NCBI RefSeq assembly: GCF_963676685.1
Contig: NC_092355.1
Span: 13,330,001 to 13,394,000 of the forward strand
Direction: 5' to 3'
Length of the DNA stretch: 64,000 nucleotides
Source of the DNA: Mytilus edulis
Lineage: Eukaryota
Position 1 is the stretch's first letter. The number at the start of each line of letters is the position of its first letter. The notes under the pieces were generated by a model. It did no database searches, was not told the DNA's origin, and saw only the letters and a program-made list of their open reading frames with translations. The position numbers were made by a program, and so were the translations under genes. Positions 5,215-61,344 of this stretch are shown one piece after another.

Positions 5215-5490
5215 TATAATACAGATACAGTTAAGTCTGCCTCCTATCTTGACTTACAACTAGAAATTAACAATGAGGGTCTGTTGAAAACAAAACTTTA
5301 AAACAGAAGACATGATTTCAGCTTTTAATTTCATATGAAGCAGACTTATCTGTATCTGTAGTATCGATGGGATAGATTCGTTCAACATAGTCGCCAAATT
5401 CTGTATTATTTAGTGAGAGAACATTATCTATATAGCGGAACGTAAAGTTAAAGGTTGCGGCTAACTTATTAACTTCATTCCTAAAATATT
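5215..5490. mobile_element. Penelope-like RT fragments in inverted arrangement
   Basis: Minus strand FNFTFRYIDNVLSLNN..IYP..DTTDT; the plus-strand piece 5215-5325 overlaps the same RT segment. Confidence 0.7.
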
Positions 5491-6975
5491 CCTTAATGAT
5501 AACCTTAATAAAGATTAAAAAAACAAAAATACCGATACTCACTTTGAAAACGAATTGAACGACGAGTGGTTGTAGTAGGAGGTTTTGCAGTATGGTGATC
5601 ATGGTCATGGTGATTACCGTGCCCGACAATGGTATGCTTGATAGTCGTTTCGAGCTGTTGGGCAGCTGAAAAAATAGCAATCAGCCCAGAAAGAAATTAA
5701 ATATCATCAGCAATTATTAATAGGAAATTGAATTGCACAATCAAAATCACAATCCGACCAAAGCGACACGTCTATAATTATATTTGACAAGGAAGAAAAC
5801 CACAAAGATCTGTATTCAATTTTAACAAAAAACTTACGACGAATAAAAAGTATACTGAATTGTTCCTAACTTATGATGAACTTTAGTCTTACGATTTGTT
5901 TTGTCAAACTTACATGTATCACTGTATGGTATTAAATATTATCAAAAGTCAAAATTCCCTAGCAAATGGCAAAAACGCTCAAACGCCAAACAATTGGATA
6001 CCAGTTGTGATATTCGTGACTTGGTACAAGCATTTTCTTATGTGGATTCAACTTATTGCTAACTAAACCTCTCACTTGTATGGTATTGCACAGAATTCCA
6101 TGATACTGACAACAATGTGCGAAAAAAACCAAACAGACAGAATAGGTTCAGACACGTTCTTTTTTTTTATTGGTCGAAACTGGGTTCTACTTTCATTAAA
6201 ACAATGAGGTACGATGAGGTACTTTTTTAATTATACAGGACAGAAAGTCTATTATACAAGATGTAAGCCAAGGATAAACGTCAAGTAACTAAACCCAATA
6301 AGACAAACTTCGAAAATAAAATAGAAACTCAAAGAGATTTCCGTACACTTAAACGCAAAATACAGATATCGTACACCGACTTGATTTCTATAGTATTTTT
6401 CAACTGAGCTCCGAGGAAAATTCAATCGCAAAATCCCTAATCAAATGGCAAAATCAAATGTCATAAAAACACATCAAATGACTGGACAACAACTGTCATA
6501 TTCCTGACTTAGTACAGGTCTTTTCAAATGTAGCAAATGGTTGATTGAACCTGGTTTTATAGCGCTAAACCTCTAACTTGTATGACAGTCGTATCAAATT
6601 CCGTTATATTTACAACGATGCGTGAACCAAACAGACATAACAAATAAAATAGTCAAAATATTGGTACAGCCGTCATCACTGTGTTACTATCTCAACAAAA
6701 CTAATCATTTAAAAAAGGGACAAAAGCATCTATCATATTAAAAAAAAAAAACATTCGTTGCCTGGCGTGTCTGGCGTCAGAAAATTTAAAAGTCACATAG
6801 GAAGATATTTTGTCGTTGAATGTTAATTCAGAACAATTATAATTTCACAGTGGAATGCTGGTTGATAGGAATATATAAAAAAAAAGTTATGTTAGAATTA
6901 ATTTCAGAAATAGACCGAGATTTAAAATCGTCATGCAAGTTGTTTAGAATTTTTAAAAATCCACATATGATTAAT

Positions 6976-9000
6976 CCCTCTTCTTCTTCTTCTTCTTCTT
7001 CTGAAAGTCCACCCTATCTGCAGGGTCACCGCATTTAAAAAAACTGTTTATTTTTAAAATTGCGTTATTTAAAATTCTATCTACTGGTTAAAATTTAAAA
7101 TAATATTAACAGAGTTAGAATAGGATAAAACTAAAAATTAGTTAAAACAGGAACTTGTATGTACACTATACATTTAAAATTATAAAATGGACAAAAGTAA
7201 TCTTATCAGTTGTTTAAATTCTCTTAGCAAAGGAAAGTGAAAGGAACTACTAATCTGTACTAGTAATTGGTTAAATGTATGGACTAGTATGGTTTCTTAA
7301 TAAGTTTAAATATATGTAATTAAAAGATAAAATGGTAAGGGATACGAATAAAACAAGAAACTTGTAAAAATTAGCAAAAGTTTTTAAATAGTTCATCTTG
7401 GGTGTCCTTGTATTGTCTATGGAATGAAGCATTAAAATCGCCAGCGATAATAATTGAATGAGTTCTTTGATATTTCAATAGTAATTCTTTTAAGATGTCC
7501 AAAGCTGCTCTATAAGCATCATGACCTTTGTCGGTACCTCTTGAGGGGAGATATACATTTATAAGACATATTGGGTCTTTTGTGGTTGAAATTTCGATAG
7601 CCTGGATTCTGTTATCTCCATCAGGAAGTTGAGAAAACATAGTTGACATGGACTTTCTATACAAAATTGCAATACCTCCTCTTGGTCTACTGATTGGAGA
7701 TAAGGGTTCATTATCATCAATTTGTCTCGAGAAATCTGAATGATGTTGTTTCAATAATTCTTTTTCATAATTAAAAAGCCAATGTTCTTGTATCAGTACA
7801 ATATCATGTTTATCAAGAATATCATCAAAGTAGTTTTTATTGGAATTAAAGCCTTTATGTTGAAAGAGACAATTCGGAGCGGACTTGATTTTCCTAAGGT
7901 TATATCATTCTTGTCACAGGGGCTGCTATATCTGGGTCCAGGAGGAATGTTTGACCTTTGTCTAAAAAAGGATTGTATATGTGTTGAACATTCTTGTTTG
8001 GCAATCCTACTGTGTCAGAACAATTTTCTGATATCATTGTCTCACTCCTTTGTTCAACAGCAAAACAGTTTTTACTATTTGAGTTTGAGGAATTTAATAT
8101 GGTATTGGGATCAGGATTTTCAGGGTAAACATATGGTTTTGGTGAATCTCTAGGAGGACCACTTTGTGAAGGAACATTCAGGTTTGCTTTCATTTCATTT
8201 CCTTTTCTGACAGCAAAACTGTTTTTACTATCTCCTGTAGAACTGTTACTAATTAAGACATTAGGAACATAGGAATAAGAATTTGTGATATGCTCTGGTA
8301 CATTTTTATCAGTAGATGTGTTTATCTGTACCTTTCCTTGAGTAGATGACATGTGGTGAATTTGAGAATGAAGATGAGTAGATGGAGTGACAGCAAAACT
8401 GTTTTTACTATCTCCTGATGAACTGTTACTTATGTCATTAGAAACGTAAGATTTTGTGATAAGCTCTGGTACAATTTTATTACCAGATGTGTTTATCTGT
8501 ACCTTTCCTTGAGTAGAGGACATGTGGTGAGTTTGAGAATGAGGATGAATTGATGGAGTGACAGCAATACTGTTATTACTATCCAAGGGAGATAATTGTG
8601 TTGCAACTGCAGCTCTATGATATATCATTTGTGGATGCTGGGCTTGCATGTGACTATTTGGTATGTTTTGTGACGGTACCATTTGAGTTCTGCTTGGTTG
8701 TCTAAACATATAAGGTGGTGGAGCTGGAACTGTCTGCTGGAATAAAGGATGAACTGGTTGTTGTAACCAATGGTTTTGCACTGAAGTTGGAGAAGGTTGA
8801 ACAACATGTTGAGAGTGTATTGTATGTACAGGGCCTTGTTGGTTCATATGTGCTGTGGCTTGCAGGTTGACTAGGTTTTGACTTTGTTGCCTAAGTGTGA
8901 AGAATTGATTTTCAAGGTGTTGCAGTCTCAAATTTGACATTTCACGCTCAAGGTCTCTGATTCTGTTATCCACTTGTGATACCATGTGATTATCCACTCG
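6976..9000 (-). mobile_element. 5'-truncated, internally deleted LINE (ORF1 remnant + APE endonuclease + 3' UTR with (GAA)n tail)
   Basis: Q/H/P/S-rich ORF with coiled-coil-like start (7900-9000). Endonuclease motifs QEHWL, GGIAIL, INVYLP and IIAGDFNA (7371-7880, frameshift near 7856). RT is absent. (GAA)7 at ~6980-7001; TAAT on both flanks. Confidence 0.8.
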
Positions 9001-10229: not shown

Positions 10230-11125
10230 GTTTTATTTCTTATTTTATACATCAACAAATATGTACTGTATAGTACCTAAGGTAGATGGGGTGTCTAAAC
10301 TATAATCTATAGATTTTTTTAATAATTTGCCAAAATGTAGAATAAAAAAGAATGGATCACGGGGCTTATTTTCACGCTACTCGGTGTTCAAAATTGACAG
10401 ATTTTGTAAAGATTATGTATGGAAAACCCAATTTTCTGCATAAAAGCATTAAGTACATAATATTCCACATCTTCAATTTTGTACCCTGTTACAAGATTTT
10501 TCAGACAAAAAACATGTTGACCAATATTAAGATCCATAAATATTTGGTGTAATAATTTCCAATAATTTTTTACCCATGTGCATTCAAAGAAAAAATGATT
10601 ATAGCTATCAGATTTGAAACATAGCTCACAGTTTTCACTATTAATTACCTTCCAGCAATACAGATTATGGTTAATAGCTAAAATATTATGCAGTAGTTTC
10701 CATCTAAACATTTTTAATCTTTTATCTTTTAAAAAAAGACAGGTAAAAGATAGATTTTTCTTAATGAAATGTATGACATTTTCGCCTGAAAGTTGTTTTT
10801 TCCATGAGCAAAAACCTACTGGGAGCTCTTTATTTGACCTGATTATAATATAATAAATTTCTTTAAACTTAATTTTATCTAAATTGTAATACAATCCATT
10901 ACAAAACATTTTAATGTCTTGTGTTATGTTGATTTTAGTATGTTTTGATATATTGCTCTTTAATTTTTGGATCCAAATTTTGGGTAAAGCTTTTCGAAGA
11001 GAAATTAATTCAGCGATCTAGTTTTGTTTCTTTTTAAGTTTATCTATTATTTTATGAGAAATTTCTCCTTTATCATCAATTACATCATTAACAAAAATTA
11101 TCCTTTTTCAGTTGATTAATTTGTA
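10230..11125 (-). mobile_element. 3' end of L1/Tx1-type LINE ORF2 (zinc-knuckle region), decayed
   Basis: FRWKLLHNILAINHNL..W....CELC..DSYNHFFFEC..V..YW is the zf-RVT pattern; absent from copy B. Confidence 0.75.
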
Positions 11126-12819
11126 TAATATGACAATACACATAGTTTTTGACCAACTACATCTGCAAAAACTACTGCAAACGCCAGTCATCGTCGGATT
11201 CTACATTCGTTTAAACCATGAATTAAATAACAAAAAAGCAAAGAGCACAAAACCTTACCAGACACAAGAAATCATAATTGAACGGTGCACATCATTATCT
11301 ATCTGCAGAACAACTAAATAGTATGCACCATGGTCACGATTGTAAATGAGATAAATTATGAAGCCTTGACATATCAATCAATACATTTGCAATATGCAAA
11401 ATTATATCTGCATTCTTTCACGTTATTTCTTCAACCGTGAATATATTAGCTTGTAATTATTTGTAGGGATGAAGCACTGTCAATATAGCTCTTGAAAACG
11501 GATACATTTTGTCGAAATGGTTTTATTACGACCCGTAAATGATAAATTTATGTCGTCAGAAAAATGTTTGTACTAGCTATGAAACATCACATAATGTTTT
11601 AAAAGATTTTTCGAAATTACAATAATTATTATTATGTGATTTGGTTAGTGATGGGAATATTCGAAATTTAAATAGCACTTAATTATTATTCATTTTTTTC
11701 AAGAAAGTACACACTACAAGTTTTAGAAGTTTGAAGACAAATTACCACATAAAAACAAAAAAAAATAATTAGTTTGGTAAATATATAACTTAAGAATTAA
11801 GATCAATAAATAAAGCTGTGTTTAAAATAAGGAAATATTTTTTTGCAATAAAAAGGTTAACTGTATGTCAATCTTTAGGCGTTGAACATTTCTTGACTAA
11901 AAAATTAAACGTATGCCTTAATTTTAAGTGAAAAATGAATGAGCATAAATAGGAATACACTAGTTTTATATATAGCAGCTGAAGCATACTTCTTTTTGTG
12001 GGATTTTCTCGTTGTGTATAAGACCCATTGGTTGAATTCTACCCATTTCTGCTCTACGATCGGGTTGTTGTGTCTTTAACACATGCCCTATAATATTTCT
12101 CAATTTTATCAATTTGAACATTTGGTACTAGCAGATAGATTGATCGTGAATCTTTCTATATGGATTTATTTAGTGGAAATAATGGTAATATATCTAAAAG
12201 AGAAAAAAAATATTTGCGTATCCTATAATTAGCAGTATATTAAAAAAAAAATTATCTCGTTTACAAGTATCTAATAAGTCATACTATAATTTCGGCATAG
12301 AAAAGTATATACGATAGATTAAGATTAAAAGTATGCACAAATAATTCACACTTGAGACGATATAAACAGTTGCTAATAATCCCGATTTAACTTTTTTTTT
12401 TTAAATTCTTACCCGATTTCAAAGGAATATTTGTTCGACCATTTTTGGTATGAAACCGCAAGTGATGTACTATGATTTGTTAGCATTACACGTATAAGTT
12501 ACAATTGCTCAAAACATTCTTACTGCAAGATAACTCATAAGCTATATATGATGTCTTATATGAATTATGTATATAGTTTAGAAAATATATAATATACCTT
12601 ATAGAGTTTAGGTGTATATTACATCTCATATAATTGTGGCATGTTTAAAGCAATTATATTCGTCGGCAACTTAAAACGCTGATTGTTGAACGACTTTATT
12701 TGTTTTCATAACTATGCGATAATGAGAGTTTCATATTTTGCCCAAATGTATGATGCCTTAAATTAAAGGAAAATAAGAAAAGTAAACACAAACACATAAA
12801 AAAATCCGTTATAAAGTTT

Positions 12820-13200: not shown

Positions 13201-14593
13201 TTTGATAACTATTATGGATTTTCGAATCAATTATTTAAATACATTTGCAATAGTAAATATAACATGCATACTTTAATAAATAAAAGTTAATACTTAACTG
13301 ACAATTAATTGGCACATGCTAGCTGAGGTAAAACTGTGCAATATTTTTATTTAAGGATTTATCGGGTGTTTCTTCATCATCACTGTACAGATTTATCATA
13401 ACAGTTGACATTTCTATGATTTTGAAAATCAAACATGCTGGTATGACTTGATCCAGAAAAGTAAAAGCAAAGAATTAAATTTATGTGTAACAAAAAAAAT
13501 TACATGAAACGAAAATAAGAGTAAACATATAAGAAAACGCCAAGAGGTATAAAAGAAAGCGCTGCGCCATGAGCTCAAGATACGTTTGTCGCAATATGAA
13601 TTGTTATTGTCCAAAAACTAGAAAAATGACTCTTTCTAGAATACAATTCCATAACTTGAAAGCGTACAATCTTACATTTATAAAAATCGAAATGGAGCTT
13701 ACGTCAATAGATATGAACAATTCAACAACATTTGTTTCAAACCTTTTTGAGTTATATTCCAACATGTTTACGACGGACTGACGGACGGACAAACAGGCGA
13801 AAAAAGGTAGACCATAAAACATGCCGCAAACGGGCTTATAAACAGAAAAAAAAAGATACCAAGAGGGCAATCAAAATAACGAGTTTAAGGGACAACGCCT
13901 TTGCAAAAAACCTATCACTTGGACAAAAAATAAATCAAAACATACATCTGAGCAACACCTATCTTACTTAAAAGAGGATGATCACATATGCTCTTCAAGA
14001 GTAAGTCGATCCTGTCAAATAAGTGACGCCAATTATTTTGTTTTAAAATTGGAATCACAAGTAACAGATAGAGTCTTTGATCTCTGTTAATGACTTAATT
14101 ATTTCAACCGAAAGGGTATTGCAAGAGACGCTCAAAGAGGCTAATTCTTCCCTCATTGTGATATTTTTCATTGCTGTTTCATTGCTTCAGAATATTATCA
14201 ACTATGAAATAAATAAAAAAAAGTACATTTTTTGTATCAGTTAAAAACATTTGTGGATTTTTTTTTCATCATGTAATATACAGTTGTCAGATCTGAAATT
14301 ATTGCAAAATGTCAAGTTAAAATAAAGACATGACAGCTACTATTTGTAAAATGTACAAATTTAAATGTAAAATTTGAAACAAGAAACCTCAATCTTTAAA
14401 ATAGAAATATCAAGGTGGAACTGGGAAATTTCAAGTTTTAAGTCAGAAATAACTTGCACTCTAAGACATTTGCAAATCTGAATTTATCGTTCGTATGAAT
14501 GACGTATCTGTCTAAACTTTATTTAGATTCAGATTTAGGTGACCCAACCTGATAAGGTAACACATGTGTCACCTGTTAGAAATGATAAGAACA

Positions 14594-17118
14594 ATGTCTT
14601 CTTATTTAACAGTATTTATATTTGGATATGCCTGTGGAATTGTATTGGCTCAGCATTCCTCTAAAACGGTTTGCATTTAAATTTTCATTTTAAAAATAAA
14701 ACATTATTTGCGCATTCAGTTCCGTAGAAATGTCATTAATCATGTTAATAATCGTTTTTTTTTTCTTTGTTTTAAGTTATAAATAAAGGCAACGGTAGTT
14801 TACCGCTGTTCTAAAATTCATAAATCGATTGAGAAGAAAACAAATCCGGGTTACAAACTAAAACTGAGGGAAACACATAAAAAATAAGAAGAAAACTACG
14901 ACACGTTCTCTTTCATTATTGATCAATATGCGTTATTGATGTCAGTGAGAAATATCTCTCCCAAAGTCACAAATTTAGACAAGGAAGTAAACAATTAAAG
15001 ACCACTGTGTTGTCTTCAACAATTATCTAAGACCATACCGGAAAGTCAGCAATAAAAGACCCCGAAAGGACAAATGTAAAACAATTCATCGAAAATAATT
15101 ACATTGGGTTTAATACACTACAATGCATAGGCTCCTGACTCAGGACTCGCACGTACAGCACTCGCAACACCCTCTTGGTGTGTTTTGTGTTGACTCGATA
15201 TCTCATTTTTATATCATTAATAACATCATTGTCTGAAATGTTTGAAATGTTCCTTACATACAAGATTATTCGGAAAAAGAAATATGTCGTCAAATCACTT
15301 AAGTTAGAATTGAACATTGTTTCTGTTTTATGATTTTGAAAACCGCTTTTGTATCATCCATTTTTCATTTAAATTTGATATAATGAAATAGGTGTGTCAT
15401 CTACGGAGTAATCAGTTTTTTATAAATAATTCGTAAAAGGAACAGTGTAACAATAAGGAGTCTTTTTCCCACATTGAATATAAATACAATATTATGGGCA
15501 TGTATGTTTTTTCCGAGTTATCTTCCCTTGAAAAATATCTAGATCTACATATTTATGAAATAAACCGTAGCCGATTTAATCTTTATGTGTGTATAAGTAA
15601 GCGAAATAATAAAATGTATTATACTCTCATTGCATAACAGTATATAATATCAAGCATGACCTAATACATCAAGAATAAGACCACTGTTTGAACATTTTAT
15701 TGATCATTAGATATTAAAATGATCAAAATCAGATATAATTTTTGTCCCATGACATATATATATATTAAATTCTTATGGTACAGTTGTTCCATTTTTTTTT
15801 CTAAAGTTCTTCAACTTTGTTATTGATATAATCCAACTGTATCGAACATTGATAACTAAATAGTAAGCCTGCTATCATTCCTGAGATTCATTTTGTATAC
15901 TGCATTTTCAGTTCGATTGTGTAATTCACAAATGTGTTCTTGATTTATCACAAGTTACCATATTGTTTATACACCTTTCCATGTGTTTTATCTTGGTTTT
16001 TGCTCATATCCAACCCCGTCATATTGCTGTTTAAAATTCTAGTTGCCAGACATTACTGATAAGAATGGTGGATGGTGTATGATGAGAGGTGAATGTGGAA
16101 ATGATAAGTTAAGCTGTGCTTATGATGGACCACCTTCCCCACTTATCAATCCAGAGGCTGTTGGTATTTTAAATCAATACTGTCCTTTCATGGTCCCAGG
16201 TAGGTTAACTTATTGTTCTCCAACAAAGCATAGACATTCATTGTCGTATAAGTAGTCACCTCGCATGCGATGTCGTAAAAGAAAAACAACTGCAGTCATA
16301 CAACGATAAGGTATACCGTACGTAATTGAGGTATGGAACTCATAATTCGTGTATTGACTGCAGGTTATCCAACCACTAGTTTTGCCCAAACCCATTCAAT
16401 CCTTATTTAATCCACATCAGATGGGTTAAATACTGCATAGCTGAGGAAAACCAAATGTTTATCGATTTTGTATATAAACGGAAACTCTTGCACATCTCTA
16501 TTTCAAATCAGTGTTTGCATTTGACACTATTTTTCTAAAATAATTTCAGGGGATCAGCCTTCAACATGTTGTAACGCGGATCAAGTGTTTACTTTTAACA
16601 AAATCTTCGGGTTCGTAAAAGAAGAATTTACAAGATGTCCGGTATGTTTCGATAACTTCATCAGCATGTTTTGTCTATTAGTATGCAGTTCATATCAGAG
16701 TACCTTAGCAAGTGCCAATGTCACAATCGATAGTTTTACTAAGCAAAAAGTAGTGACGTCAGTCGATTATTACGTAGCACGTGATTATGTGGATGGAATG
16801 TTTAATTCATGTGCCAATGTTAGAACGCCTTATTCAAACGAAAAAGCAATTAGTCGCATGTGTGGTGAGACAGCATCAGCATGCACCCCAGAAAACTTTC
16901 TTAAGTTCGTAGGATCAAAGTCAAACAGGCTTGTTACGTATGATATATCTTTTAAAGAAACAGATAAACCTTTTGTTCGAGTTGGAAATAAAACATTCGT
17001 TCCTATGAATTACACCACTACACCGTGTACCGATAGATGCCAATGTAAGGATTGTAATACAACTGTTTGTCCACCACCACCTGCAAACACGAGCGTGCCT
17101 AAATGGAAGCTGTTCTGA
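14594..17118 (+). CDS. Stand-alone secreted NPC1 N-terminal-domain (sterol-binding fold) protein, ~266 aa
   Basis: Exon 1 14594-14668 (MSSYLTVFIFGYACGIVLAQHSSKT, signal-peptide-like, phase 0, donor GTTTGC; alternative in-frame ATG at 14582). Exon 2 16043-16199 (WCMMRGECG...SCAYDGPPSPL...YCP, phase 1). Exon 3 16550-17118 (TCCNADQ...RCPVCFDNFISMFCLLVCS...MFNSC...MCG...CQCKDC..VCPPPP). 18 Cys in the NPC1-NTD spacing; stop falls before TM1. Exon 1 is less certain than exons 2-3. Confidence 0.9.
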
Positions 17119-17182
17119 TGGGGAGAACAAGTAGCAAAGCAAAAGGCGTATTAGATGTATTTAATGTTGCAGCACACGAGCG

Positions 17183-17188
17183 AATAAA
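17183..17188 (+). promoter_or_regulatory. Polyadenylation signal of NPC1-NTD gene
   Basis: AATAAA 64 nt after the TGA. Confidence 0.55.
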
Positions 17189-18639
17189 ATTTAGATTACA
17201 ATTATGTCTGTTCATAGATCCTTTCTGGAGAGTAAATGATGCATGTAGGCAAACAATGCATGTTCCTAGTCAGTAATATGACAGATGTTATTCTATTCGT
17301 TTGATGTGTTTGAGCTTTTAATTTTGTTACTTGATAACAATCTTTCTGTTTTGAAATGTCCTCGGAGATGGTTTTTTTCGTTGTTTTAATAATCAAAAAC
17401 TCGTCCTTGTAAATGACGTCAGTTAAAACACTTACAAATGTAAATTAGTGTATGTTCTACGTGATTGACTGCTGTGTTTACGCCGTCAATTCAACATTGT
17501 TCAGTGAAAAATAGATATTGCAAATTTAGCACAAAATTAATTTTAAACTAAAAACAAGTTCCGTTTAGCGATTAACCATTAGGAAATTACTGTCAGTTGG
17601 CTGTTAAATTATACAATTTTTCATTGTATTCAATCCTGTTAATTTTTAAATGTTGTTATATATCGTGTTTATTTTCTCAAAATAGATCATTAAAATTAAC
17701 AGTATATTTTACGAAATCAGCAACGATAAACTTGATGGTAAATTGCATTCCCAATTTTATTTACAATCATCAACAACAATTTCTTTATATTCAAAACACT
17801 ATTAAATAATCATAGATTTGTACATGGAACTGTCCAAAAGAGGGGTGAAAGATACCAGAGGGACAATCAAACTCATAGATCGAATATAATCTGACAACGC
17901 CATGGCTAAGATATAAAAAGACAAACAGACAAATCATTGTACTATGACACAACATAGAAAGTTAAAGACTAAACAAAACAAACCACATCAGATCCTTTAT
18001 GTGATCTTATATGTTCCGGAAGGGTAGGCAAATCCTGCTCTTATTGTTGTCAATATCAGCTCTGGTATCATTAGAGATTCAGCTATATATCGGACTGAGT
18101 GCTTAAGCCCACATGCAAGATATGGGTCGAGGAATGATACAAGAGCCGATACGGAAAATTCCACGATATGATATATTTATCATGGCTAACGACATTGAAA
18201 CGAAAAACATAATAAACGGTTAATAATAAGATGGAAAAATAATTTGTTTATTTGCTTTCAATTTGTGTTTCTTTGTTTGGTTTTGCTTTTTTCTCCATAG
18301 TATAGCATTTCGATTATACCTCTGTAATATAGCATGGGAGCCCCATATAGTCTCCGGTTATTTGCACTGAGCAGCAATATGACAAAACTCAACGTATTCC
18401 AAACAAATATGTGAGAATAGTGTTAACGATATACTGCAAAAAAAATGTTTGTAATATATCATCTTATTTGGCCTCATACGTGTAAGGTTAATGTATTTTA
18501 TTTTCAATTTGACAAGAACAGCTAGTAATAATAGCTAGGCCATCACACAAAACAGCAATCAGACACTTGCTTCCTTCAAATAACATCCTGGTAAACCTGC
18601 GTTTAACCTGAACATACATGTTATTACAAAGGCCTTCAC

Positions 18640-19010
18640 GAGTTGGTTTACCACTATGGAATATCCGTTTCACAGATGATATCGGATATGTTCCTAATGA
18701 CGTTACTACAATCCCGTATCCTTTTCCCGACTGTGACCTACCACATTAGAATATTTACCGGGTTGGTAATAGCACGAGCAATTCGACGTTTGTCAGATAT
18801 GAAACATAATCTGCTTACACTTCCGATGCATATAATATCACCCCCTAGTGTTTGGTGGAGTGCGTGTTGCTCATTTTTGTTTCTATGTTGTGTTTTGTGT
18901 ACTATTGTGTGTCTGTTTGTCTTTATTTTTTTCTTTCTTTTTTAGCCATGGTATTGTCAGTTTATTTTCTATATATGAGTTTGAATGTCCCTTTGGTATC
19001 TTTCGATCCT
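18640..19010. mobile_element. Penelope-like 3'/pLTR-type repeat
   Basis: Same family as 17840-18040 (opposite strand), 21095-21450, 42310-42490 and 60640-60960. Confidence 0.6.
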
Positions 19011-19539
19011 TTTTTTTTTTTTTTGCTACTTGTATCAGAATAATATGTGTACTGTTTAGATAATTATTAAACAGCGTTTTGAATTCAAAGAAATTGGGGT
19101 CGATAGTTATATTATAAAATGAGGTAGGTAGTACTTCAATATACGATCATGTTTATCACAACTCATATATATATTGAGTCGATTCTAGTGGTCGTTTAAA
19201 GCTGATCGAACTACTGAAAAAACTATATAACAACATTGTCGCAATTACAGGATTAAATGAATGAACAACGATATAAATGTACATCTGCATTATATTTTGG
19301 TAATATACTTTTTAAGAAAAAAGAGTAAAATTTCGTGGAGTTTATTATGCTTATATGTAAAGTAAAAAAAAACACTATGTTGCTAAGTATCAAATACTGA
19401 CATGCAAATGATAGCCTTCGTGTATCTAAATCTTCATTGTTGTATTTTTAAGATAAAAACTGAAAAATTAAAAACTACTCAAAATCGGTATAAACAGTGA
19501 AAATCAATATCAACTAATCTGTCTTTTTTTAAGCTGATA

Positions 19540-19819
19540 TACCGTACAGCAGGTATACGAATTTATTTTGGCGTTTATTATTTTGGCAGATTTAAAACTT
19601 TTATCAATACCTTTGTATGTAAACTTTGGAATTCGTTATCAATACCTTTGTATGTAAACTTTGGAATTCGTTATCAATACCTTTGTATGTAAACTTTGGA
19701 ATTCGTTATCAATACCTTTGCATGTAAACTTTGGAATTCGCGTAATTTACCTAAAAGTTTGCGATTTTGTTCTATCCGCGAAAATTTACTCCCCGCGATT
19801 ATAACCCTCTATACAGTAT
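19540..19819. mobile_element. MITE containing a 35-bp x4 tandem expansion (19601-19740)
   Basis: Ends ATACCGTA.../...TACAGTAT; unit TTATCAATACCTTTGTATGTAAACTTTGGAATTCG; the paralogous MITE at 63623-63844 has a single unit. Confidence 0.7.
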
Positions 19820-20629
19820 GTCCTTGTTTGAAAACATATCCTAAATAACGTTAATTCAGTCACAATATATACCAAGGTCAATGCAGAAATATAAGTTGAT
19901 CACAATGTTCTTGAAAAATGTCAATTCCATTAATTAAATTGTTGTTTTATTTTTATTTGTTTCATCGGTAACCATACATATCCTATTTGTTTCCTCTAAC
20001 ATATCAATACATTGTTGTTTTTAGAATAATACGACACGTCATTTTTAGAGGAAACAATTATTTTTTTTATGAACATTTGATGTCAATATTAAATTTTGAC
20101 AAATGAAAAACTAAGATCAATCGTTGATGAAATAAGAATAAGGATGATAATGAATGGGATAAGAATAAGAGAAGTATATTAATACCTATGACACGACACG
20201 AAAGATCATATATTAATCACTCTGTCAGTATGCTGTTATACATTTCTTAAGAAATAAACACAACAATAGGAGACAAATGAAGAGACAAATGAAAATTTCA
20301 AGGTTACAAATACAAGATAATGTTGTCTTTTTTCTATATAGTTGTTTTGACAAAAACAAATCCTTTTTCGATCTCTGCACTTTTATTATGTTATTAGTTA
20401 AAAATTTGGTGTGCATTTGATAGAATGATTTAAAAAAAAAAAGACTTTTAAATTTAAAAATTGCTTGGAAGGGATAAAGATAAAGATATATGTGTTTATA
20501 GAATTACGAATAAACACCAGATTTTATCCAAAAAAATCATCTAAGCCTTTGCACTGCGACTTTCCAAGAGTGCATATGTTCAAACATACATGTATGCATG
20601 TGCTTCAGTCAGAAAGCTATAAAACAAGG

Positions 20630-56500: not shown

Positions 56501-59262
56501 GAGTTCAGTATTTTTGTGATTTTACTTTTTTTTCAAACGAACAGATAACAACCGGCATTTTACTGCCTTGTCACAGGCATTTTCTCATGTGTGCTAAACT
56601 TGGTGTTATAGCTAACGAAACCTCTCACTTGTATGGTTATCACCAAAAAAAAAATCAATGATATTGACAACGAGGTGCGAAAACAAATAAACAGACATAA
56701 TAGGTAAAGGTACGTTATTTTTTTTTATTTTTTTACTGGACGGACGGAACTGAGTATTACTTTCATTAAAACAATGAGGTACGATGAGGTGCTTTGTTAA
56801 TTAATATACGACAAGGAAGTCTGTTTTATAAGATAAAATCAAAAGACGAACGCCAAGTTACCAAATCTTAAATAGGCAAACTCTAGAAATGAAATAGATA
56901 CTCAAATAGATTTCCGTACACGATTTCAAAACACAAAATATAAATATCGTACACCGACTTGACTTCTATTATATTTTTCCATTTAGCTAAATAATATCAG
57001 ATTAAAGCAACGTATTTATCGATGGATTTTTTTGGAATATACAGAATTAGTTTTGAGATCAACATCTTCTGGTGAGAAAAAAAGTGAAAATATACAAATC
57101 TCCTGCTCACATTGCAATGTCGAACCAACTGTTATCCATAAACATTACACTCGATGGAAAGTCAATTTCACATAAAAGTCAATCATAATTCGACTCAATC
57201 ATTATAGCTTCAATCGATATAGATTTTTGAACGTATTTTTCGGACATGTTATGGATTGAGTTCGATTAAAAATGGTAAAATGAAAGGAAGGAGATGTGGT
57301 GTGATTGGCAATGAGAAACCTATCCACTGAAATTAACTGAATTGGATGTAATTAGCTACAGTCAGCCATAAGGCTTTCCGAAATGGTACCGACCAGAACA
57401 TGCACGACAAAGGCTTAATATAATGTGATAACCAATACCGTGGTGTCGTTAATTGTTGTAGTATAACTCATAACGTTGGAATTCTTCTTGCAGATTTACG
57501 CATTTGCTAGTCATGTTAGTTCTCTAAGTTTTTAACGTGCACTTTGGGGTAATAGTTTGGTTCATATCAAAAATAGTAGGATAACATTTAATTTTTCATA
57601 TAACGTTGTCAATTTGTCAAAATGAATAAGTTGTGCACAATATAATGACAATACATCTTTCCTTATCGTTATGCGGTATACGGAAATGTGAACTAAACGT
57701 CAAGTAATTAAATCTGATCTATTTAGAGCATGCTATTTGTTAACTGATACACACAACAATACACAACAATTGCACACTTACAATATACAAATGTTCAAAC
57801 ACAATCCCAGGCAAATTACTATGCTAGTAAACATGCAAATTTCTACTGATATAAATTATTAAAAACAAAGCAAAGAGAAAAGAAAATAGTCAAAGGAGGA
57901 TAACTATATTTTTGACGTTTAATATTACATTTCTTTAGCAGTAACACTTTCTGCCATCAATAACAAGTTGCCTACAATGCTATCAGCTATGTTTTTAGTT
58001 GGCAATCTACATGCGTTGATTCGAGCGTAACTCATGGGTCTAGTAAACACGAAACACCGGTCTTGCGTACAGCATTATGCATCTGCATTTTATAAGTATG
58101 AACTATTAGGGATATGCAAACTACAATACATTGCTGTCATATGTGATTGCTAATCGGTTTATGTTTGAAAATCAGGCTTGTTCTGATAGACATGTGAAAT
58201 AACTAAAAATAAAACGCTCAATATAATGTGATAAGTGCTAACCGGCCATTGTTTTATATTGTTTGCAGAAAAACAACAAAATAAACTAATTGTTAACTCG
58301 TTACATTTTTCGTAAAGATAGCAGATGTCAAAGGCACAATGTTTCGCCTCCATGTCATGTTGTAATTTCTATGATTGTTAAAAATAAAAAATAAAAGGTC
58401 TTTACGTCTTGATTGGTTATTGATTTCCAGAGAAATCACTTTAGTTTATTTTTCAATTAATGCTAAATCTGCTAGAGAATACACTCATAACTCTTCTTTT
58501 GTTTAACTATATATGTTCTGTATTGTTTGTTTACCTCTGAACATATCATTTGTATGCACTTGCGGCAAACGAGTTATATTTAAAACAATCGCTAGTTTAT
58601 TACAGAAAATATTTAATGATGCAGAAATCCTTGGTTTACATTCTTATAAGCTTGGTTTATCTATAATATACAGAGTACGATCGGTGACCCTCATTCCACA
58701 TTGTTCCACATTTCTTATCATTGCATATTGTCGGTTGTAGTATAGTTTTAAAAGTTTCAAGGTTAATGACGCAATTCCCTTATCACTTTTTATAAACTTT
58801 CTACAAATTGATGACTTTTTTTAACAGGGAAGAAACTGACCATTATCTTTTTAAATTAAAATCACATTCGATCTTATATACGATAATCGCCAAAGGGTAA
58901 TGGATTATGTTGGCCCTGACGGACAAGAAGAAACAGTAAAAGAAACCATGGCCAGTTATAGTGTATATAATTCTATTTACAACTTTTAACCAATACTAAC
59001 AGTAGCAGTAGCATTCGTATATGTTATAAGAGTCAAATCGTCCAATTCATGTGTTTTTACTGCAGATGATTGATTTGTATACGACAATAAATATAACGTT
59101 TTCGAGTAAACAAATTTGCAAACAGTACTTTAAACGCCAATTATCAAATGAATGTCTATTTTGACTAGTTCCACCTTCGTTTAAACCTGTTATTAAAATA
59201 CAAATAAGCATAGAGCACAAAATCTTACCAGACACAAGAAACCACAATTGAACGGTACACAT
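41534..59262 (-). CDS. Micro-exon gene, 14 coding exons, 260-aa predicted secreted His-rich protein with two internal repeats (unknown family)
   Basis: Exons (minus): 59262-59229, 55566-55465, 52202-52170, 50469-50422, 49982-49929, 49133-49035, 48291-48217, 46471-46433, 45915-45883, 44814-44767, 44134-44042, 43448-43428, 42588-42517, 41565-41534. All are GT-AG and phase 1; total 783 nt with no internal stop. Protein: MCTVQLWFLVSGLIAISPA-KHHHETTIKHTTKPPTTTTHRSFFFQSSTCHSVRRKQHAILLLEEWVKHDNYNAVERLYHDIYHKSLQDRKRFFLDNVGSHPSNQLVHSYTSVYDEAFLNGNPDYTHVESYINTHMNAECRRQIMIWIEDLAKHDTKSPTETGEHCTDLRDANHVISLLNGWERHHHFADVQRLYLEVALGFHALTETNGDKEMEHDRLHDDDSVSDYTHVRLRLVRLSSYCRQIVFAWIEDDARKHTAPA*. Exons 1-6 are conserved in the paralogue with only frame-preserving indels. 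Exons 9-14 repeat exons 3-8. AATAAA lies 22 nt after the stop. Confidence 0.88.
41627..41814. mobile_element. MITE
   Basis: ACTGTAAACCA...TGGTTTACAGT terminal inverted repeat with internal TTCGCG/CGCGAA motifs. Confidence 0.6.
42662..42960. mobile_element. Abundant short interspersed repeat (AAAAGAAGATGTGGTATGATTGCCAATGAG family)
   Basis: Related pieces at 75-124, ~47900-48160, ~55050-55330, ~57290. Confidence 0.65.
44997..45560. repeat. 94-bp tandem repeat, 6 copies, intronic
   Basis: AGCTTCTTTTTGATAG... recurs at 44997, 45091, 45185, 45279 etc.; copies differ by few bases. Confidence 0.95.
54175..55053. repeat. ~197-bp degenerate tandem repeat, ~4 copies
   Basis: CTTTTTCAAATCAACTTGGA... 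at ~54181, 54380, 54576, 54851; the ~100-bp segment 54680-54780 is duplicated at 54955-55053. Confidence 0.8.
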
Positions 59263-61344
59263 TATTCTCCGTCTGTAGAACAACTAAATAGTATGCACCA
59301 TTGTCACGATTGTAAATGAGATAAATTATGAGGCCTTGACATATCAGTCATTACATTTTCAATATTCATAATTATCTCTGCGTTCTATCTCGTTATTTGT
59401 TCAATCGTGAACATATGAGCTAGTTATTTTTGTAGGGATGTTACACTTTTGAGGCGATATAAAAAGTTGCTAATAATCCCGATATAACATCTTTTCTATA
59501 ATTCTTACCCGATTTTTTCATTTCCCAACCTGTTGATAATTTGTATTAAATCAACGTTTGGTTCGTTTAATCTCAGTTCTTCATTGGTAAAAATTCGATT
59601 ATGACGTCAAACTGTGTTGCTTTTTTCTGAATTTCTTAGTGTGAAAAAAAAGCGACCATGTCTGATGCCGTAACATAGCGAAAGCACATCTTTGTACTGT
59701 AGTAAAACTATGCATTTTTTTTATTTAAGGATTAGTTAAGTTTTTTTTCATATAACTGTTCCTATTTATCATAACTGTTTTAATTTCTATGAAATCAAAC
59801 ATTCTGGTACGACTTGACCAAGAGAAGTAAAAGCAAAGAAAACATGAATGGTTCTGATTAACTTAACAATTACTGCTGATTAAGTACCAAATTTAGGATC
59901 ACATTAATGTGTAACAAAACAAATAAGCATGAAGCCAAAACATAAATAAAATTAAACATATAAGAAAACGACAAAAAGTATACAAGAAAGTGCTTCGCCA
60001 TGAGCTCAAGATTCTTTTGTCGCAAAATCAACAAGTAAAGTTCGATATAACTCTTCAATAGCTTATTAGAAATTTATATAAAAAACACTTAAGCTAGTTT
60101 AGCTAAAAGATATTTTATTCATGTTTTGGCTTCATGCTTATTAATTTTGCAGTTGATAATATTCTGAAGCAAAGAAACAGTAATGAAAAATATCACAATA
60201 AGGGAAGAATTAGCTTGTTTGAGCGTCTATTGCAATACCCTTTCGAATGAGATAATTAAGTCATTAACAGATATCAAAGACTCCATCTGTTACTTGTGAT
60301 TCCAATTAACAAAATAATTGGCATCACTTGTTGGACAGGATCGGCTAACTCTTGAAGAGCATATGTGATCACCCTCTTTATTTTAGTAAGATACGTGTAG
60401 CAGTGTGTTTATGTCCACTTGCTATGTTCTTGCAAAGGCGTTGTCCCTTTAATTCGTTATTTTGATTGCTCTATCGGTGTCTTCCGTTTCTGTTTATAAG
60501 CTCGTTTCCTGGACGTTTTATGGTCTACCTTTATTCGCCCGCTTGTTCGTCCGTCAGTCCGTCGTACACATGTTGGACTATAACTAAAAAAGATTTGAAA
60601 CAAATTTTAGGAAATTTATTTGAATTGTTCATATATATTGTTCCTAATGACTTTACTACAATTCCGTTCCCTTTTCACGACTGTGACCTACCAAATTATA
60701 CTATTTACTGGGTTATTATAAGCATGAACAACACGAAATTTGCCACATATGAAACAAAAATTGCCTACCCTTCCGGAGCACATGTGATCATCTCCGTGAT
60801 TGGTGGGATTTGTGTTGCTCATCCTTTTTTTTCTATGCTGTGTTTTGTCTACCTTAATTTGTCTGTTTGTCTGGAATTTTTCTTTTTTAGCCATGGTATT
60901 GTCAGCTAGTTTTTTCTTATATATGAGTTTGAATGTCCCTCTGGTATCTTGGGCCCCTCTTTTGTTGCTATCTGAATATCATGTGTTTATTATTATATCG
61001 TTTTGAATTCAAAGAAATGTATGTACATAATTTTATGATAAAATAAGGTAGGTTGTACTTCAATATACGATCATGTTTATCATAACTCATTTATATATAC
61101 AGTCGATTCTAGTGGTCTCAAAGATGATCAAGCAAACGAGAAAAAAACCAACTAAATAACAACATTGTAGCAATCAGAGGATAAAATGAATAAATAACAA
61201 TATAATTTTACGTCTGAATCATATTTTGGAAATAAACATTTTTAGAATAAAAAGAGAAAAAATTTAGTTGAGTGTATTATGCTAATATGAAAATTGGAAA
61301 AACAATTTATTTGCTAAATATCAAATAAATGCATTGTCATGATA

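What the first reader, a model, noticed from the sequence alone, without database searches (positions are those of the whole stretch)
14594..17188. Free-standing, secreted NPC1 N-terminal domain
Seen: signal peptide, all 18 NTD cysteines, the Pro-rich linker (CPPPPANTSVPKW), then TGA and AATAAA. No hydrophobic TM1 follows, and I found no further NPC1 exons downstream. Established: in NPC1/NPC1L1 this domain is the luminal sterol-binding part of a 13-TM transporter. Inference: a soluble sterol/lipid carrier derived by partial gene duplication, plausibly for dietary sterol capture.
Basis: partly seen in the sequence, partly recalled or inferred. Interest (0 to 1): 0.8.

Follow-up and report, generated by a model that had tools for sequence, protein, structure and literature searches.

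The report
Mussel secreted NPC1 N-terminal domain protein
This is a real, transcribed mussel gene for a small soluble protein made only of the sterol-binding head of the cholesterol transporter NPC1; a one-base frameshift cut it off from a longer membrane-free relative, and public databases already list it, without any study of its function.

Summary
A three-exon gene (14594-17118, + strand) in a Mytilus genome encodes 266 aa: a signal peptide, a complete NPC1_N domain with 18 cysteines, a Pro-rich linker and a stop. RNA contigs from three studies have both GT..AG introns removed and run through the stop. No TM, SSD, Patched or MLD exon lies in the window. Elsewhere in the genome such exons occur only in two full-length NPC1 genes 59 Mb away.

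The proposed origin, partial duplication of the 13-TM gene, is probably wrong. The +1 frame just past the linker still reads CLNGSCSDG. This is the linker motif of the nearest relatives, which in the oyster protein leads from the NTD straight into the middle luminal domain with no TM1. One extra base in the linker created PKWKLF-stop.

The truncated gene has stayed under constraint. dN/dS is 0.38 against a decaying paralogue, and the same C-terminus is found in three Mytilus species. The predicted fold matches the human NPC1 NTD (TM 0.82). However, several ligand and NPC2-docking positions are uniquely changed, so sterol binding is unproven.

Gene models of this protein, and of NTD-only proteins in horseshoe crabs, a tick and insects, already exist. 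I found no paper on them. Moderate interest.

The parts
14563..14593 (+). minimal 5' UTR (the longest RNA contig starts at 14563)
   Evidence: table 8: contigs start at 14563, 14584 and 14589
14594..14668 (+). exon 1 coding part: start codon and signal peptide MSSYLTVFIFGYACGIVLAQHSSKT, phase 0
   Evidence: joint 14667/8 to 16042/3, GT..AG; hydrophobic window at residue 1
14669..16042 (+). intron 1 (GT..AG, 1374 nt); holds a repeat piece at about 14780-14900 that is abundant in RNA from other loci
   Evidence: tables 2, 5 and 7
16043..16199 (+). exon 2: start of the NPC1_N domain (LPDITDKNGGWCMMRGECGNDKLSCAYDGPPSPLINPEAVGILNQYCPFMVP + 1 nt), 4 cysteines
   Evidence: (NPC1_N profile 3-46)
16200..16549 (+). 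intron 2 (GT..AG, 350 nt), at the same domain position as in the genome's full-length NPC1 genes
   Evidence: table 5; (all loci start at profile position about 48-49)
16550..17115 (+). exon 3 coding part: rest of the NPC1_N domain (14 cysteines, 5 N-glycosylation sequons) and the Pro-rich linker ending PKWKLF
   Evidence: (E 1.9e-39)
17071..17095 (+). linker spacer of 25 nt between the last NTD Cys codon (17068-17070) and the relic Cys codon (17096-17098). Relative P0012 has 8 codons (24 nt) here, so one extra base is inferred
17096..17134 (+). out-of-frame (+1) relic CLNGSCSDGENK-stop of the ancestral linker motif C-P-x-G-S-C-F-x-G, which in the oyster protein P0007 precedes the middle luminal domain
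   Evidence: (the only such motif in six frames of the window; present in only 4 of 166 NPC1_N proteins, all close relatives)
17116..17118 (+). stop codon TGA, created by the frameshift
   Evidence: contigs read through it without a joint
17119..17259 (+). 3' UTR. AATAAA lies at 17183-17188 and AGTAAA at 17231-17236. RNA contigs end at 17185 (two runs) and 17259 (one run)
   Evidence: table 8

Best explanation
A three-exon Mytilus gene encodes a 266-aa protein of the secretory pathway that is only an NPC1 N-terminal domain. It has a signal peptide, the nine-disulfide helical domain with a central lipid pocket, a short Pro/Thr-rich tail, and no membrane anchor. Shown: the gene is transcribed, spliced and terminated as read. 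It has the NPC1 NTD fold. It has been kept under purifying selection since truncation in at least three Mytilus species. Inferred with moderate confidence: it descends from a membrane-free NTD+MLD paralogue of the kind found in other molluscs, not directly from the 13-TM transporter. One extra base in the linker shifted the frame, produced PKWKLF-stop, and the MLD exons were later lost. Inferred with lower confidence: it acts as a soluble carrier or binder of a hydrophobic ligand, a sterol or related lipid, in an extracellular or lysosomal/digestive lumen. Its head-group recognition would be altered, and it probably does not use the NPC2 hand-off surface of NPC1.
For: Gene and transcript: Pfam NPC1_N E 1.9e-39 on exon 3. 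One spliced contig per run in three runs from three studies has both GT..AG introns removed, carries the stop inside the contig, and ends at 17185 or 17259. In 14 RNA-type runs from 7 studies the share of words (0.52-0.61) fits intron-less mRNA. Identical 266-aa models exist in M. galloprovincialis (VDH98572.1) and M. edulis (CAG2243517.1), and the same C-terminus occurs in M. coruscus.

No partner exons: SSD, Patched and MLD are found only at the two NPC1 genes at C12:72.15-72.24 Mb. tblastn of the NPC1 NTD-TM1 exon matches only the NTD part in the window.

Origin: the +1 frame at 17096 reads CLNGSCSDG, against CPNGSCFDG, CPDGSCFDG and CPHGSCFSG in P0012, the Saccostrea NTD+MLD protein P0007, and P0025. 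The motif is unique in the window and limited to these relatives. The spacer is 25 nt against 24. In the ML tree the solo clade (96/96) is sister to the Haliotis and Saccostrea NTD+MLD proteins (85/65). NTD+MLD architecture is confirmed by Pfam.

Constraint: exon 3 is 89.5% identical to paralogue L001, against 83.7% for the intron and 73.4% for the 3' flank. dN/dS is 0.38, Fisher p 0.0016. All 18 Cys are kept across species and paralogues.

Fold: AF2 pLDDT 88.4. The Foldseek top hit is human NPC1 NTD 3gkh (TM 0.82), followed by NPC1L1 NTD and yeast NCR1 NTD with ergosterol. The position of human Q79 is kept.
Against: Ligand binding was not tested. Positions equivalent to human N41, N86, P202 and L175 are S, I, T and R. 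These states are unique to the Mytilus solo clade among 56 aligned NTDs. P202A/F203A abolishes cholesterol binding in human NPC1 (PMC6062155), and L175Q/L176Q abolishes transfer from NPC2 (PMC6163316).

The AU test does not reject a clade of the solo genes with the Mytilus full-length NPC1 genes (p 0.33), so the origin rests mainly on the short relic motif. The source organisms of the nearest relatives (P0004, P0012, P0025) are unknown, and their MLD exons were not seen.

The second copy in this genome (L001) is broken, and copy number varies among Mytilus assemblies. The one raw-read RNA run gave no reads on the gene. Assembled contigs cannot prove the 3' end.
Confidence: 0.6

Rival explanations
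1. Partial duplication of the 13-TM NPC1 gene with a breakpoint or stop right at TM1. The protein would then be a direct fragment of the transporter.
For: In the full-length Mytilus genes the same exon runs from the NTD into TM1. KWKLF resembles the QWKIF that precedes TM1 in the Mya arenaria NPC1 model. The AU test does not reject a clade with the Mytilus NPC1 genes (p 0.33).
Against: Identity to the genome's own NPC1 NTDs is only 33-37%, and no trace of TM1 remains after the stop. The +1 frame relic CLNGSCSDG matches the TM-less linker of the nearest relatives at the expected spacing. The ML tree places the clade beside NTD+MLD proteins.
Confidence: 0.15
2. A transcribed relic: a truncated gene on its way to loss, with no function of its own.
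For: The sister copy at C12:18.58 Mb has ATG>CTG, a 30-bp deletion, a 1-bp frameshift and no exon 2. Some M. edulis models are frameshifted or shortened. Several conserved ligand positions are replaced. There is a long stem branch.
Against: dN/dS is 0.38 with p 0.0016, even though one partner is a pseudogene. The exon is more conserved than the intron and flank. All 18 cysteines and the unusual pocket residues are conserved in M. edulis, M. galloprovincialis and M. coruscus, with the same C-terminus. Spliced mRNA is present in many runs.
Confidence: 0.15
3. Short isoform or first exons of a longer gene whose MLD or TM exons lie further downstream.
For: A GT remains at 17131-17132, where the ancestral donor is expected. 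Contigs cannot prove transcript ends.
Against: There is no MLD, SSD or Patched exon in the window or anywhere on the chromosome outside 72.15-72.24 Mb. Three contigs read through the stop and past 17132. The coding frame is already closed before that GT.
Confidence: 0.03
4. A soluble NTD with a new, non-sterol role: binding another lipid or microbial product, or acting as a decoy or regulator of membrane NPC1 or NPC2.
For: Clade-specific replacements at N41, N86, L175 and P202 are conserved within Mytilus. The related fold in folate receptor and Juno shows how versatile the scaffold is in ligand choice.
Against: The pocket remains mostly hydrophobic, and the near-universal Gln (human Q79) is kept. 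There is no direct evidence for any other ligand.
Confidence: 0.2

Closest known systems
N-terminal domain of NPC1 / NPC1L1 / yeast NCR1 (Pfam PF16414; PDB 3gkh, 3qnt, 9f40)
   Same: Same domain by profile (136-166 bits). It has 18 cysteines at the conserved columns. The predicted fold has TM 0.79-0.83 to the solved NTDs. The Gln equivalent to human Q79 is kept, and a Pro-rich linker follows the domain.
   Different: It is not attached to any transporter: no TM1, MLD, SSD or CTD. Residues equivalent to N41, N86, L175, P202 and W27 are S, I, R, T and M.
TM-less NTD+MLD proteins of molluscs (RefSeq models 'NPC intracellular cholesterol transporter 1-like': Saccostrea echinata XP_061187964.1, Argopecten irradians XP_069106602.1, Littorina saxatilis XP_070208614.1, Haliotis rubra XP_046580963.1)
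   Same: They are among the nearest named relatives of the NTD. They are soluble or lipid-anchored and lack TM1. The linker motif CPxGSCFxG of the Saccostrea protein survives here out of frame.
   Different: The Mytilus gene has lost the MLD altogether and ends 16 residues after the last NTD cysteine.
NTD-only gene models in arthropods (Limulus polyphemus XP_013783069.1 and Tachypleus 255 aa, Ornithodoros turicata XP_064455043.1 267 aa, Sitodiplosis mosellana XP_055296329.1 265 aa, Lamprigera yunnana KAF5285860.1 277 aa)
   Same: Same architecture: signal peptide plus NPC1_N, ending just after the last cysteine motif.
   Different: They sit at separate places in the tree, near arthropod NPC1s, so they are probably of independent origin. 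They keep Pro at the P202 position and mostly a polar residue at N86.
NPC2 (ML-domain soluble lysosomal/secreted sterol carrier)
   Same: Functional analogy only: a small, disulfide-rich, signal-peptide-bearing soluble protein with a sterol-sized pocket.
   Different: Unrelated fold and family. Pfam finds only NPC1_N here. NPC2 buries the sterol side chain, whereas the NPC1 NTD buries the 3-beta-OH end (PMC6163316).
Folate receptor / Juno / riboflavin-binding protein fold
   Same: Distant structural similarity (Foldseek E about 0.01-0.1, TM about 0.3-0.4), and these are soluble or GPI-anchored ligand carriers.
   Different: Similarity is far weaker than to the NPC1 NTD, and there is no family membership.

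Membership tests
NPC1_N domain (Pfam PF16414) | Profile score above the curated cut-off (27 bits) | tested here: met
   136.3 bits on exon 3 alone and 19.1 bits on exon 2 alone. 165.9 bits for the 98%-identical whole protein P0001.
NPC1_N domain (Pfam PF16414) | Eighteen conserved cysteines (nine disulfides in solved NTDs, PMC3078110) | tested here: met
   4 + 14 cysteines in exons 2 and 3, at the conserved columns of a 56-sequence alignment. The disulfide bonds themselves cannot be tested here.
NPC1_N domain (Pfam PF16414) | NTD fold | tested here: met
   AF2 pLDDT 88.4, pTM 0.80. Foldseek hit 3gkh_A: E 1.6e-21, TM 0.82, rmsd 2.9 A.
NPC1_N domain (Pfam PF16414) | Sterol-pocket and hand-off residues of human NPC1 (W27, N41, Q79, N86, L175/L176, P202/F203) | tested here: inconclusive
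   Q79 is kept and F203 is Y. W27>M is common in other NTDs. N41>S, N86>I, L175>R and P202>T are unique to the Mytilus clade. Roles are taken from PMC6062155, PMC6163316 and PMC3078110. The role of N41 is from my own memory of Kwon et al. 2009, which is not held in the library.
NPC1_N domain (Pfam PF16414) | Binds cholesterol or another sterol | not testable with these tools
   Needs recombinant protein and a binding assay.
NPC1 / NPC1L1 transporters (13 TM, RND-like) | Sterol-sensing and Patched-type membrane domains | tested here: not met
   No PF12349 or PF02460 match in the window at E <= 1. Matches are found only elsewhere in the genome.
NPC1 / NPC1L1 transporters (13 TM, RND-like) | TM1 after the linker, then the middle and C-terminal luminal domains | tested here: not met
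   The stop comes 16 residues after the last NTD cysteine, and there is no hydrophobic segment. tblastn and PF22314 find no TM1 or MLD sequence in the window.
Mollusc TM-less NTD+MLD paralogues | NPC1_N followed directly by NPC1_MLD in one protein | tested here: not met
   The MLD is absent. Only the linker relic remains, out of frame.
Mollusc TM-less NTD+MLD paralogues | Linker motif C-P-x-G-S-C-F-x-G after the Pro-rich stretch (Saccostrea subgroup) | tested here: met
   Present as CLNGSCSDG in the +1 frame at 17096-17122. It is unique in six frames of the window.
NPC2 / ML domain | ML (MD-2-related lipid-recognition) domain | tested here: not met
   The Pfam scan returns only NPC1_N.

The most novel reading that the evidence does not exclude
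Molluscs, and independently several arthropods, have repeatedly freed the luminal modules of NPC1 (NTD+MLD, NTD alone, NTD plus one TM, NTD tandems) as soluble proteins. The Mytilus NTD-only protein would then be a secreted or lysosomal lipid shuttle with retuned specificity, for example for dietary algal sterols. It would work in trans with membrane NPC1, much as separately expressed NTD-TM1 can restore transport to NTD-less NPC1 in cultured cells (PMC6062155).
Probability: 0.2. Interest if true: 0.7.

Novelty: new variant of a known kind. Interest (0 to 1): 0.45.

Why it matters
The NPC1 N-terminal domain is known as the sterol-receiving head of a large lysosomal or intestinal transporter. 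Here it is kept under selection as a soluble protein of its own, and similar unstudied models exist in other invertebrates. This suggests the domain can act away from the pump, which bears on how sterols are handed between carriers. Mussels feed on microalgae, so a secreted NTD could be part of dietary sterol handling, although the changed pocket residues leave the ligand open. The frameshift relic also gives a clean, datable example of a new protein architecture arising from a single inserted base.

Tried and rejected
I could therefore not fetch the DNA and source of the nearest relatives P0004, P0012 and P0025, nor the DNA of the Mytilus orthologues. As a result, dN/dS could only be computed against the in-genome paralogue L001.

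2. Four literature searches for free-standing NPC1 N-terminal domains, and for NPC1 in Mytilus, found nothing relevant. Kwon et al. 2009 is not held. Residue roles were taken from PMC3078110, PMC6062155 and PMC6163316.

3. The AU test of 'solo clade + Mytilus full-length NPC1' was inconclusive (p 0.33). The 146-row tree has an unresolved backbone.

4. The raw-read RNA run X24 had no reads on the exons, so no true 5' or 3' ends or strand could be read.

5. I first took the resemblance of KWKLF to QWKIF before TM1 of the Mya NPC1 as a sign of truncation at TM1. I rejected this as coincidence once the +1 frame relic was seen.

6. The spliced (joined) model was not typed or sent to any tool. Exons were searched one by one. 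Whole-protein steps (big search, PDB search, structure prediction) used the database protein P0001, which has the same length and ends and is 98% identical.

Full report
WHAT IS THERE

The window is AT-rich animal DNA. It lies at C12:13,330,001-13,394,000 of a 1.37-Gb assembly. The nearest database proteins are from Mytilus galloprovincialis, M. edulis and M. coruscus, so this is a mussel genome.

- Exon 1, 14594-14668, reads MSSYLTVFIFGYACGIVLAQHSSKT.
- Exon 2 is 16043-16199.
- Exon 3 is 16550-17118, with the stop TGA at 17116-17118.
- AATAAA lies at 17183-17188.

Pfam NPC1_N matches exon 3 alone with 136 bits (E 1.9e-39, profile positions 50-234) and exon 2 with profile positions 3-46. Exons 2 and 3 carry 4 + 14 = 18 cysteines. 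The only hydrophobic window is the N-terminal one.

Whole-protein analyses used P0001 (VDH98572.1, M. galloprovincialis, 266 aa). It has the same ends and is 98% identical.

TRANSCRIPTION AND GENE ENDS

In 14 RNA-type runs from 7 studies, 0.52-0.61 of the sampled words of 16043-17250 are present. That is what an mRNA without the 350-nt intron would give.

I laid four runs on 14001-19900. Three runs from three studies each hold one contig of 878-953 nt. Each contig starts at 14563-14589 and joins 14668 to 16043 and 16199 to 16550, both GT..AG. Each carries the stop internally and ends at 17185 (two runs) or 17259 (one run). The latter end is 23 nt after an AGTAAA. Intron bins have zero depth, so these contigs come from RNA. 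No joint leaves exon 3.

The one raw-read run had no reads on the gene, so true ends and strand were not seen. One contig carries an in-frame 6-nt insertion in the signal peptide.

NO PARTNER EXONS

Scans of the whole assembly find NPC1_N at four places:
- two full-length NPC1 genes in inverted orientation at C12:72.15 and 72.24 Mb;
- this gene;
- a second solo copy at C12:18.58 Mb.

SSD, Patched and NPC1_MLD matches accompany only the two genes at 72 Mb. In those genes the NTD exon runs on, in one open frame, into TM1 and beyond. tblastn of that exon against the window matches only the NTD part, at 33-37% identity.

ORIGIN

A search of 1.84 billion representative proteins with P0001 gave the nearest relatives outside Mytilus:
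- unnamed short contig proteins at 46-48% identity (P0004, P0012, P0025/P0155);
- among the nearest named relatives, mollusc proteins in which NPC1_N is followed directly by the NPC1 middle luminal domain, without TM1. These are from Saccostrea echinata (439 aa), Argopecten irradians (532 aa), Littorina saxatilis (495 aa) and Haliotis rubra (406 aa).

In the Saccostrea protein and in P0012 and P0025, the Pro-rich stretch is followed by the motif P-C-P-x-G-S-C-F-x-G. In the Saccostrea protein this leads into the MLD.

In the window, the frame one base ahead of the coding frame reads, from 17096, CLNGSCSDGENK-stop. The pattern C..GSC..G occurs once in all six frames of the 64-kb window. It occurs in only those four of 166 NPC1_N proteins. 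The distance from the last NTD cysteine codon to this relic cysteine codon is 25 nt, against 24 nt (8 codons) in P0012. One extra base in the linker therefore explains the new tail PKWKLF and the TGA.

The same tail, PKWK[LIV]F-stop, is present in the second copy in this genome, in three distinct M. edulis models and in M. coruscus. So the frameshift predates these duplications and species splits.

A focused maximum-likelihood tree puts the solo clade with P0155 and P0012 (96/96) and makes it sister to the Haliotis and Saccostrea NTD+MLD proteins (85/65). The two Mytilus NPC1 genes pair with each other (98/94). An AU test does not reject forcing the solo clade together with the Mytilus NPC1 genes (p 0.33). 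The origin therefore rests mainly on the relic motif. I give it about 0.7.

CONSTRAINT

The copy at C12:18.58 Mb (L001) lies in a duplicated block of more than 5 kb. In this genome it is broken. Its start codon is CTG, exon 3 has a 30-bp deletion and a 1-bp deletion, and exon 2 is not found.

Against this copy, exon 3 is 89.5% identical. The intron is 83.7% identical and the 3' flank 73.4%. dS is 0.22, dN is 0.086 and dN/dS is 0.38. The excess of synonymous change is significant (Fisher p 0.0016). Both copies already carry the truncation, so coding constraint continued after it. All 18 cysteines are kept in all Mytilus versions.

STRUCTURE AND LIGAND SITE

AlphaFold2 with a 56-sequence alignment gives pLDDT 88.4 and pTM 0.80. 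Foldseek's best matches are the human NPC1 NTD (3gkh, TM 0.82, rmsd 2.9 A), the NPC1L1 NTD and the yeast NCR1 NTD with ergosterol. Folate receptor and Juno follow far behind.

I aligned the protein to human NPC1 and compared 56 NTDs:
- The almost universal Gln (human Q79) is kept.
- N198 is kept, F203 is Y, and W27 is M, as in many NTDs.
- N41 is S, N86 is I, L175 is R and P202 is T. These four states occur only in the Mytilus solo clade, and they are conserved within it.

In human NPC1, P202A/F203A abolishes cholesterol binding (PMC6062155). L175Q/L176Q abolishes transfer from NPC2, and W27, Q79 and N86 line the site of the buried 3-beta-OH end (PMC6163316). W27 and F203 set the room near sterol C4 (PMC3078110).

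My reading is that a hydrophobic pocket is probably retained, but head-group recognition and the NPC2 docking patch have changed. Sterol binding is plausible and unproven.

HOW IT MOST LIKELY WORKS

Shown: the gene is spliced and expressed, and its product is an NTD-only protein with a signal peptide and no anchor, under constraint.

Inferred: after signal-peptide cleavage, a glycosylated protein of about 245 residues (5 sequons in exon 3) enters the secretory pathway. It has no KDEL-type tail, no TM segment and no GPI-type hydrophobic tail. It would then be released outside the cell or delivered to lysosomal or digestive compartments, where it would bind a hydrophobic ligand.

It could hand that ligand to membrane NPC1 in trans. 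This is conceivable because a separately expressed NTD-TM1 restores transport to NTD-less NPC1 in cells when it reaches lysosomes (PMC6062155). That construct was membrane-tethered, however.

WHAT IS KNOWN

The gene is already in GenBank and UniProt as 'hypothetical predicted protein', 'NPC1' or 'Niemann-Pick C1 N-terminal domain-containing protein'.

NTD-only models with signal peptides also exist in Limulus and Tachypleus (255 aa), Ornithodoros (267 aa), Sitodiplosis (265 aa) and Lamprigera (277 aa). An NTD plus one TM occurs in Strigamia, and a five-fold NTD repeat in Strongylocentrotus. These sit at different places in the tree, which suggests repeated origins.

I found no paper that describes any of them. 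The architecture is therefore catalogued but unstudied. The frameshift origin and the clade-specific pocket changes are, as far as I could find, new.

VERDICT

The finding is real and well delimited. It is probably wrong about the mode of origin, and its proposed function is untested. I class it as a new variant of a known kind, of moderate interest.

Noticed in passing
L001 (G000:C12:18577000-18586999), minus strand, about 5375-8440: Second solo NPC1-NTD copy in a duplicated block of more than 5 kb. Its start codon is CTG, exon 3 has a 30-bp deletion (removing the Gln79-equivalent helix start) and a 1-bp frameshift, and exon 2 is not found. It has the same KWKIF-stop tail. The M. edulis model CAG2211111.1 of this type is intact at the frameshift site, so the lesion may be polymorphic or lineage-specific.
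   Followed up: partly
G000:C12:72145000-72172000 (+) and 72223000-72241000 (-); L002, L003: Two full-length NPC1 genes lie in inverted orientation about 65 kb apart. They are each other's closest relatives in the NTD tree (98/94). In both, the NTD exon continues through the linker and TM1 in one open frame of 366-378 codons.
   Followed up: partly
proteins P0007, P0009, P0010, P0015, P0005, P0006 (not in the window): Mollusc proteins with NPC1_N followed directly by NPC1_MLD and no TM1 (Saccostrea, Argopecten with a hydrophobic C-terminal tail, Littorina, Haliotis). In Mya arenaria such a unit is fused in the gene model upstream of a full-length NPC1. In the tree, some of them pair with a full-length NPC1 (the Littorina protein with an unnamed one, the Mya unit with the NTD of its own model), which hints at repeated origin or gene conversion. 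No paper on them was found.
   Followed up: partly
protein P0163 (Strongylocentrotus purpuratus XP_030831391.1, 1220 aa): A sea-urchin 'uncharacterized protein' made of five tandem NPC1_N domains.
   Followed up: no
window 11109-11471, 13705-14216, 18689-19396 versus 59063-59440, 60640-60138 (inverted), 60639-61327: The flanks of the NTD gene recur near 59-61 kb at 77-83% identity, but the 14.2-18.7 kb segment holding the gene is missing there, at a junction near 60639/60640 with an inverted piece.
   Followed up: partly
window 7371-7754 (-), 10388-10909 (-): Open frames with endonuclease/exonuclease/phosphatase and zf-RVT matches: pieces of a non-LTR retrotransposon upstream of the gene.
   Followed up: no
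window about 14780-14900, 17290-17330, 17840-17910, 18650-19000: Short repeat pieces with very high summed depth and many loose ends in all RNA runs. These are interspersed repeats transcribed from many loci and are not part of this gene's mRNA.
   Followed up: no
window 14616: One RNA contig (run X1, the other organism label) carries an in-frame 6-nt insertion (TACATG) in the signal-peptide region and C>T at 14631. This is allelic or species variation.
   Followed up: no
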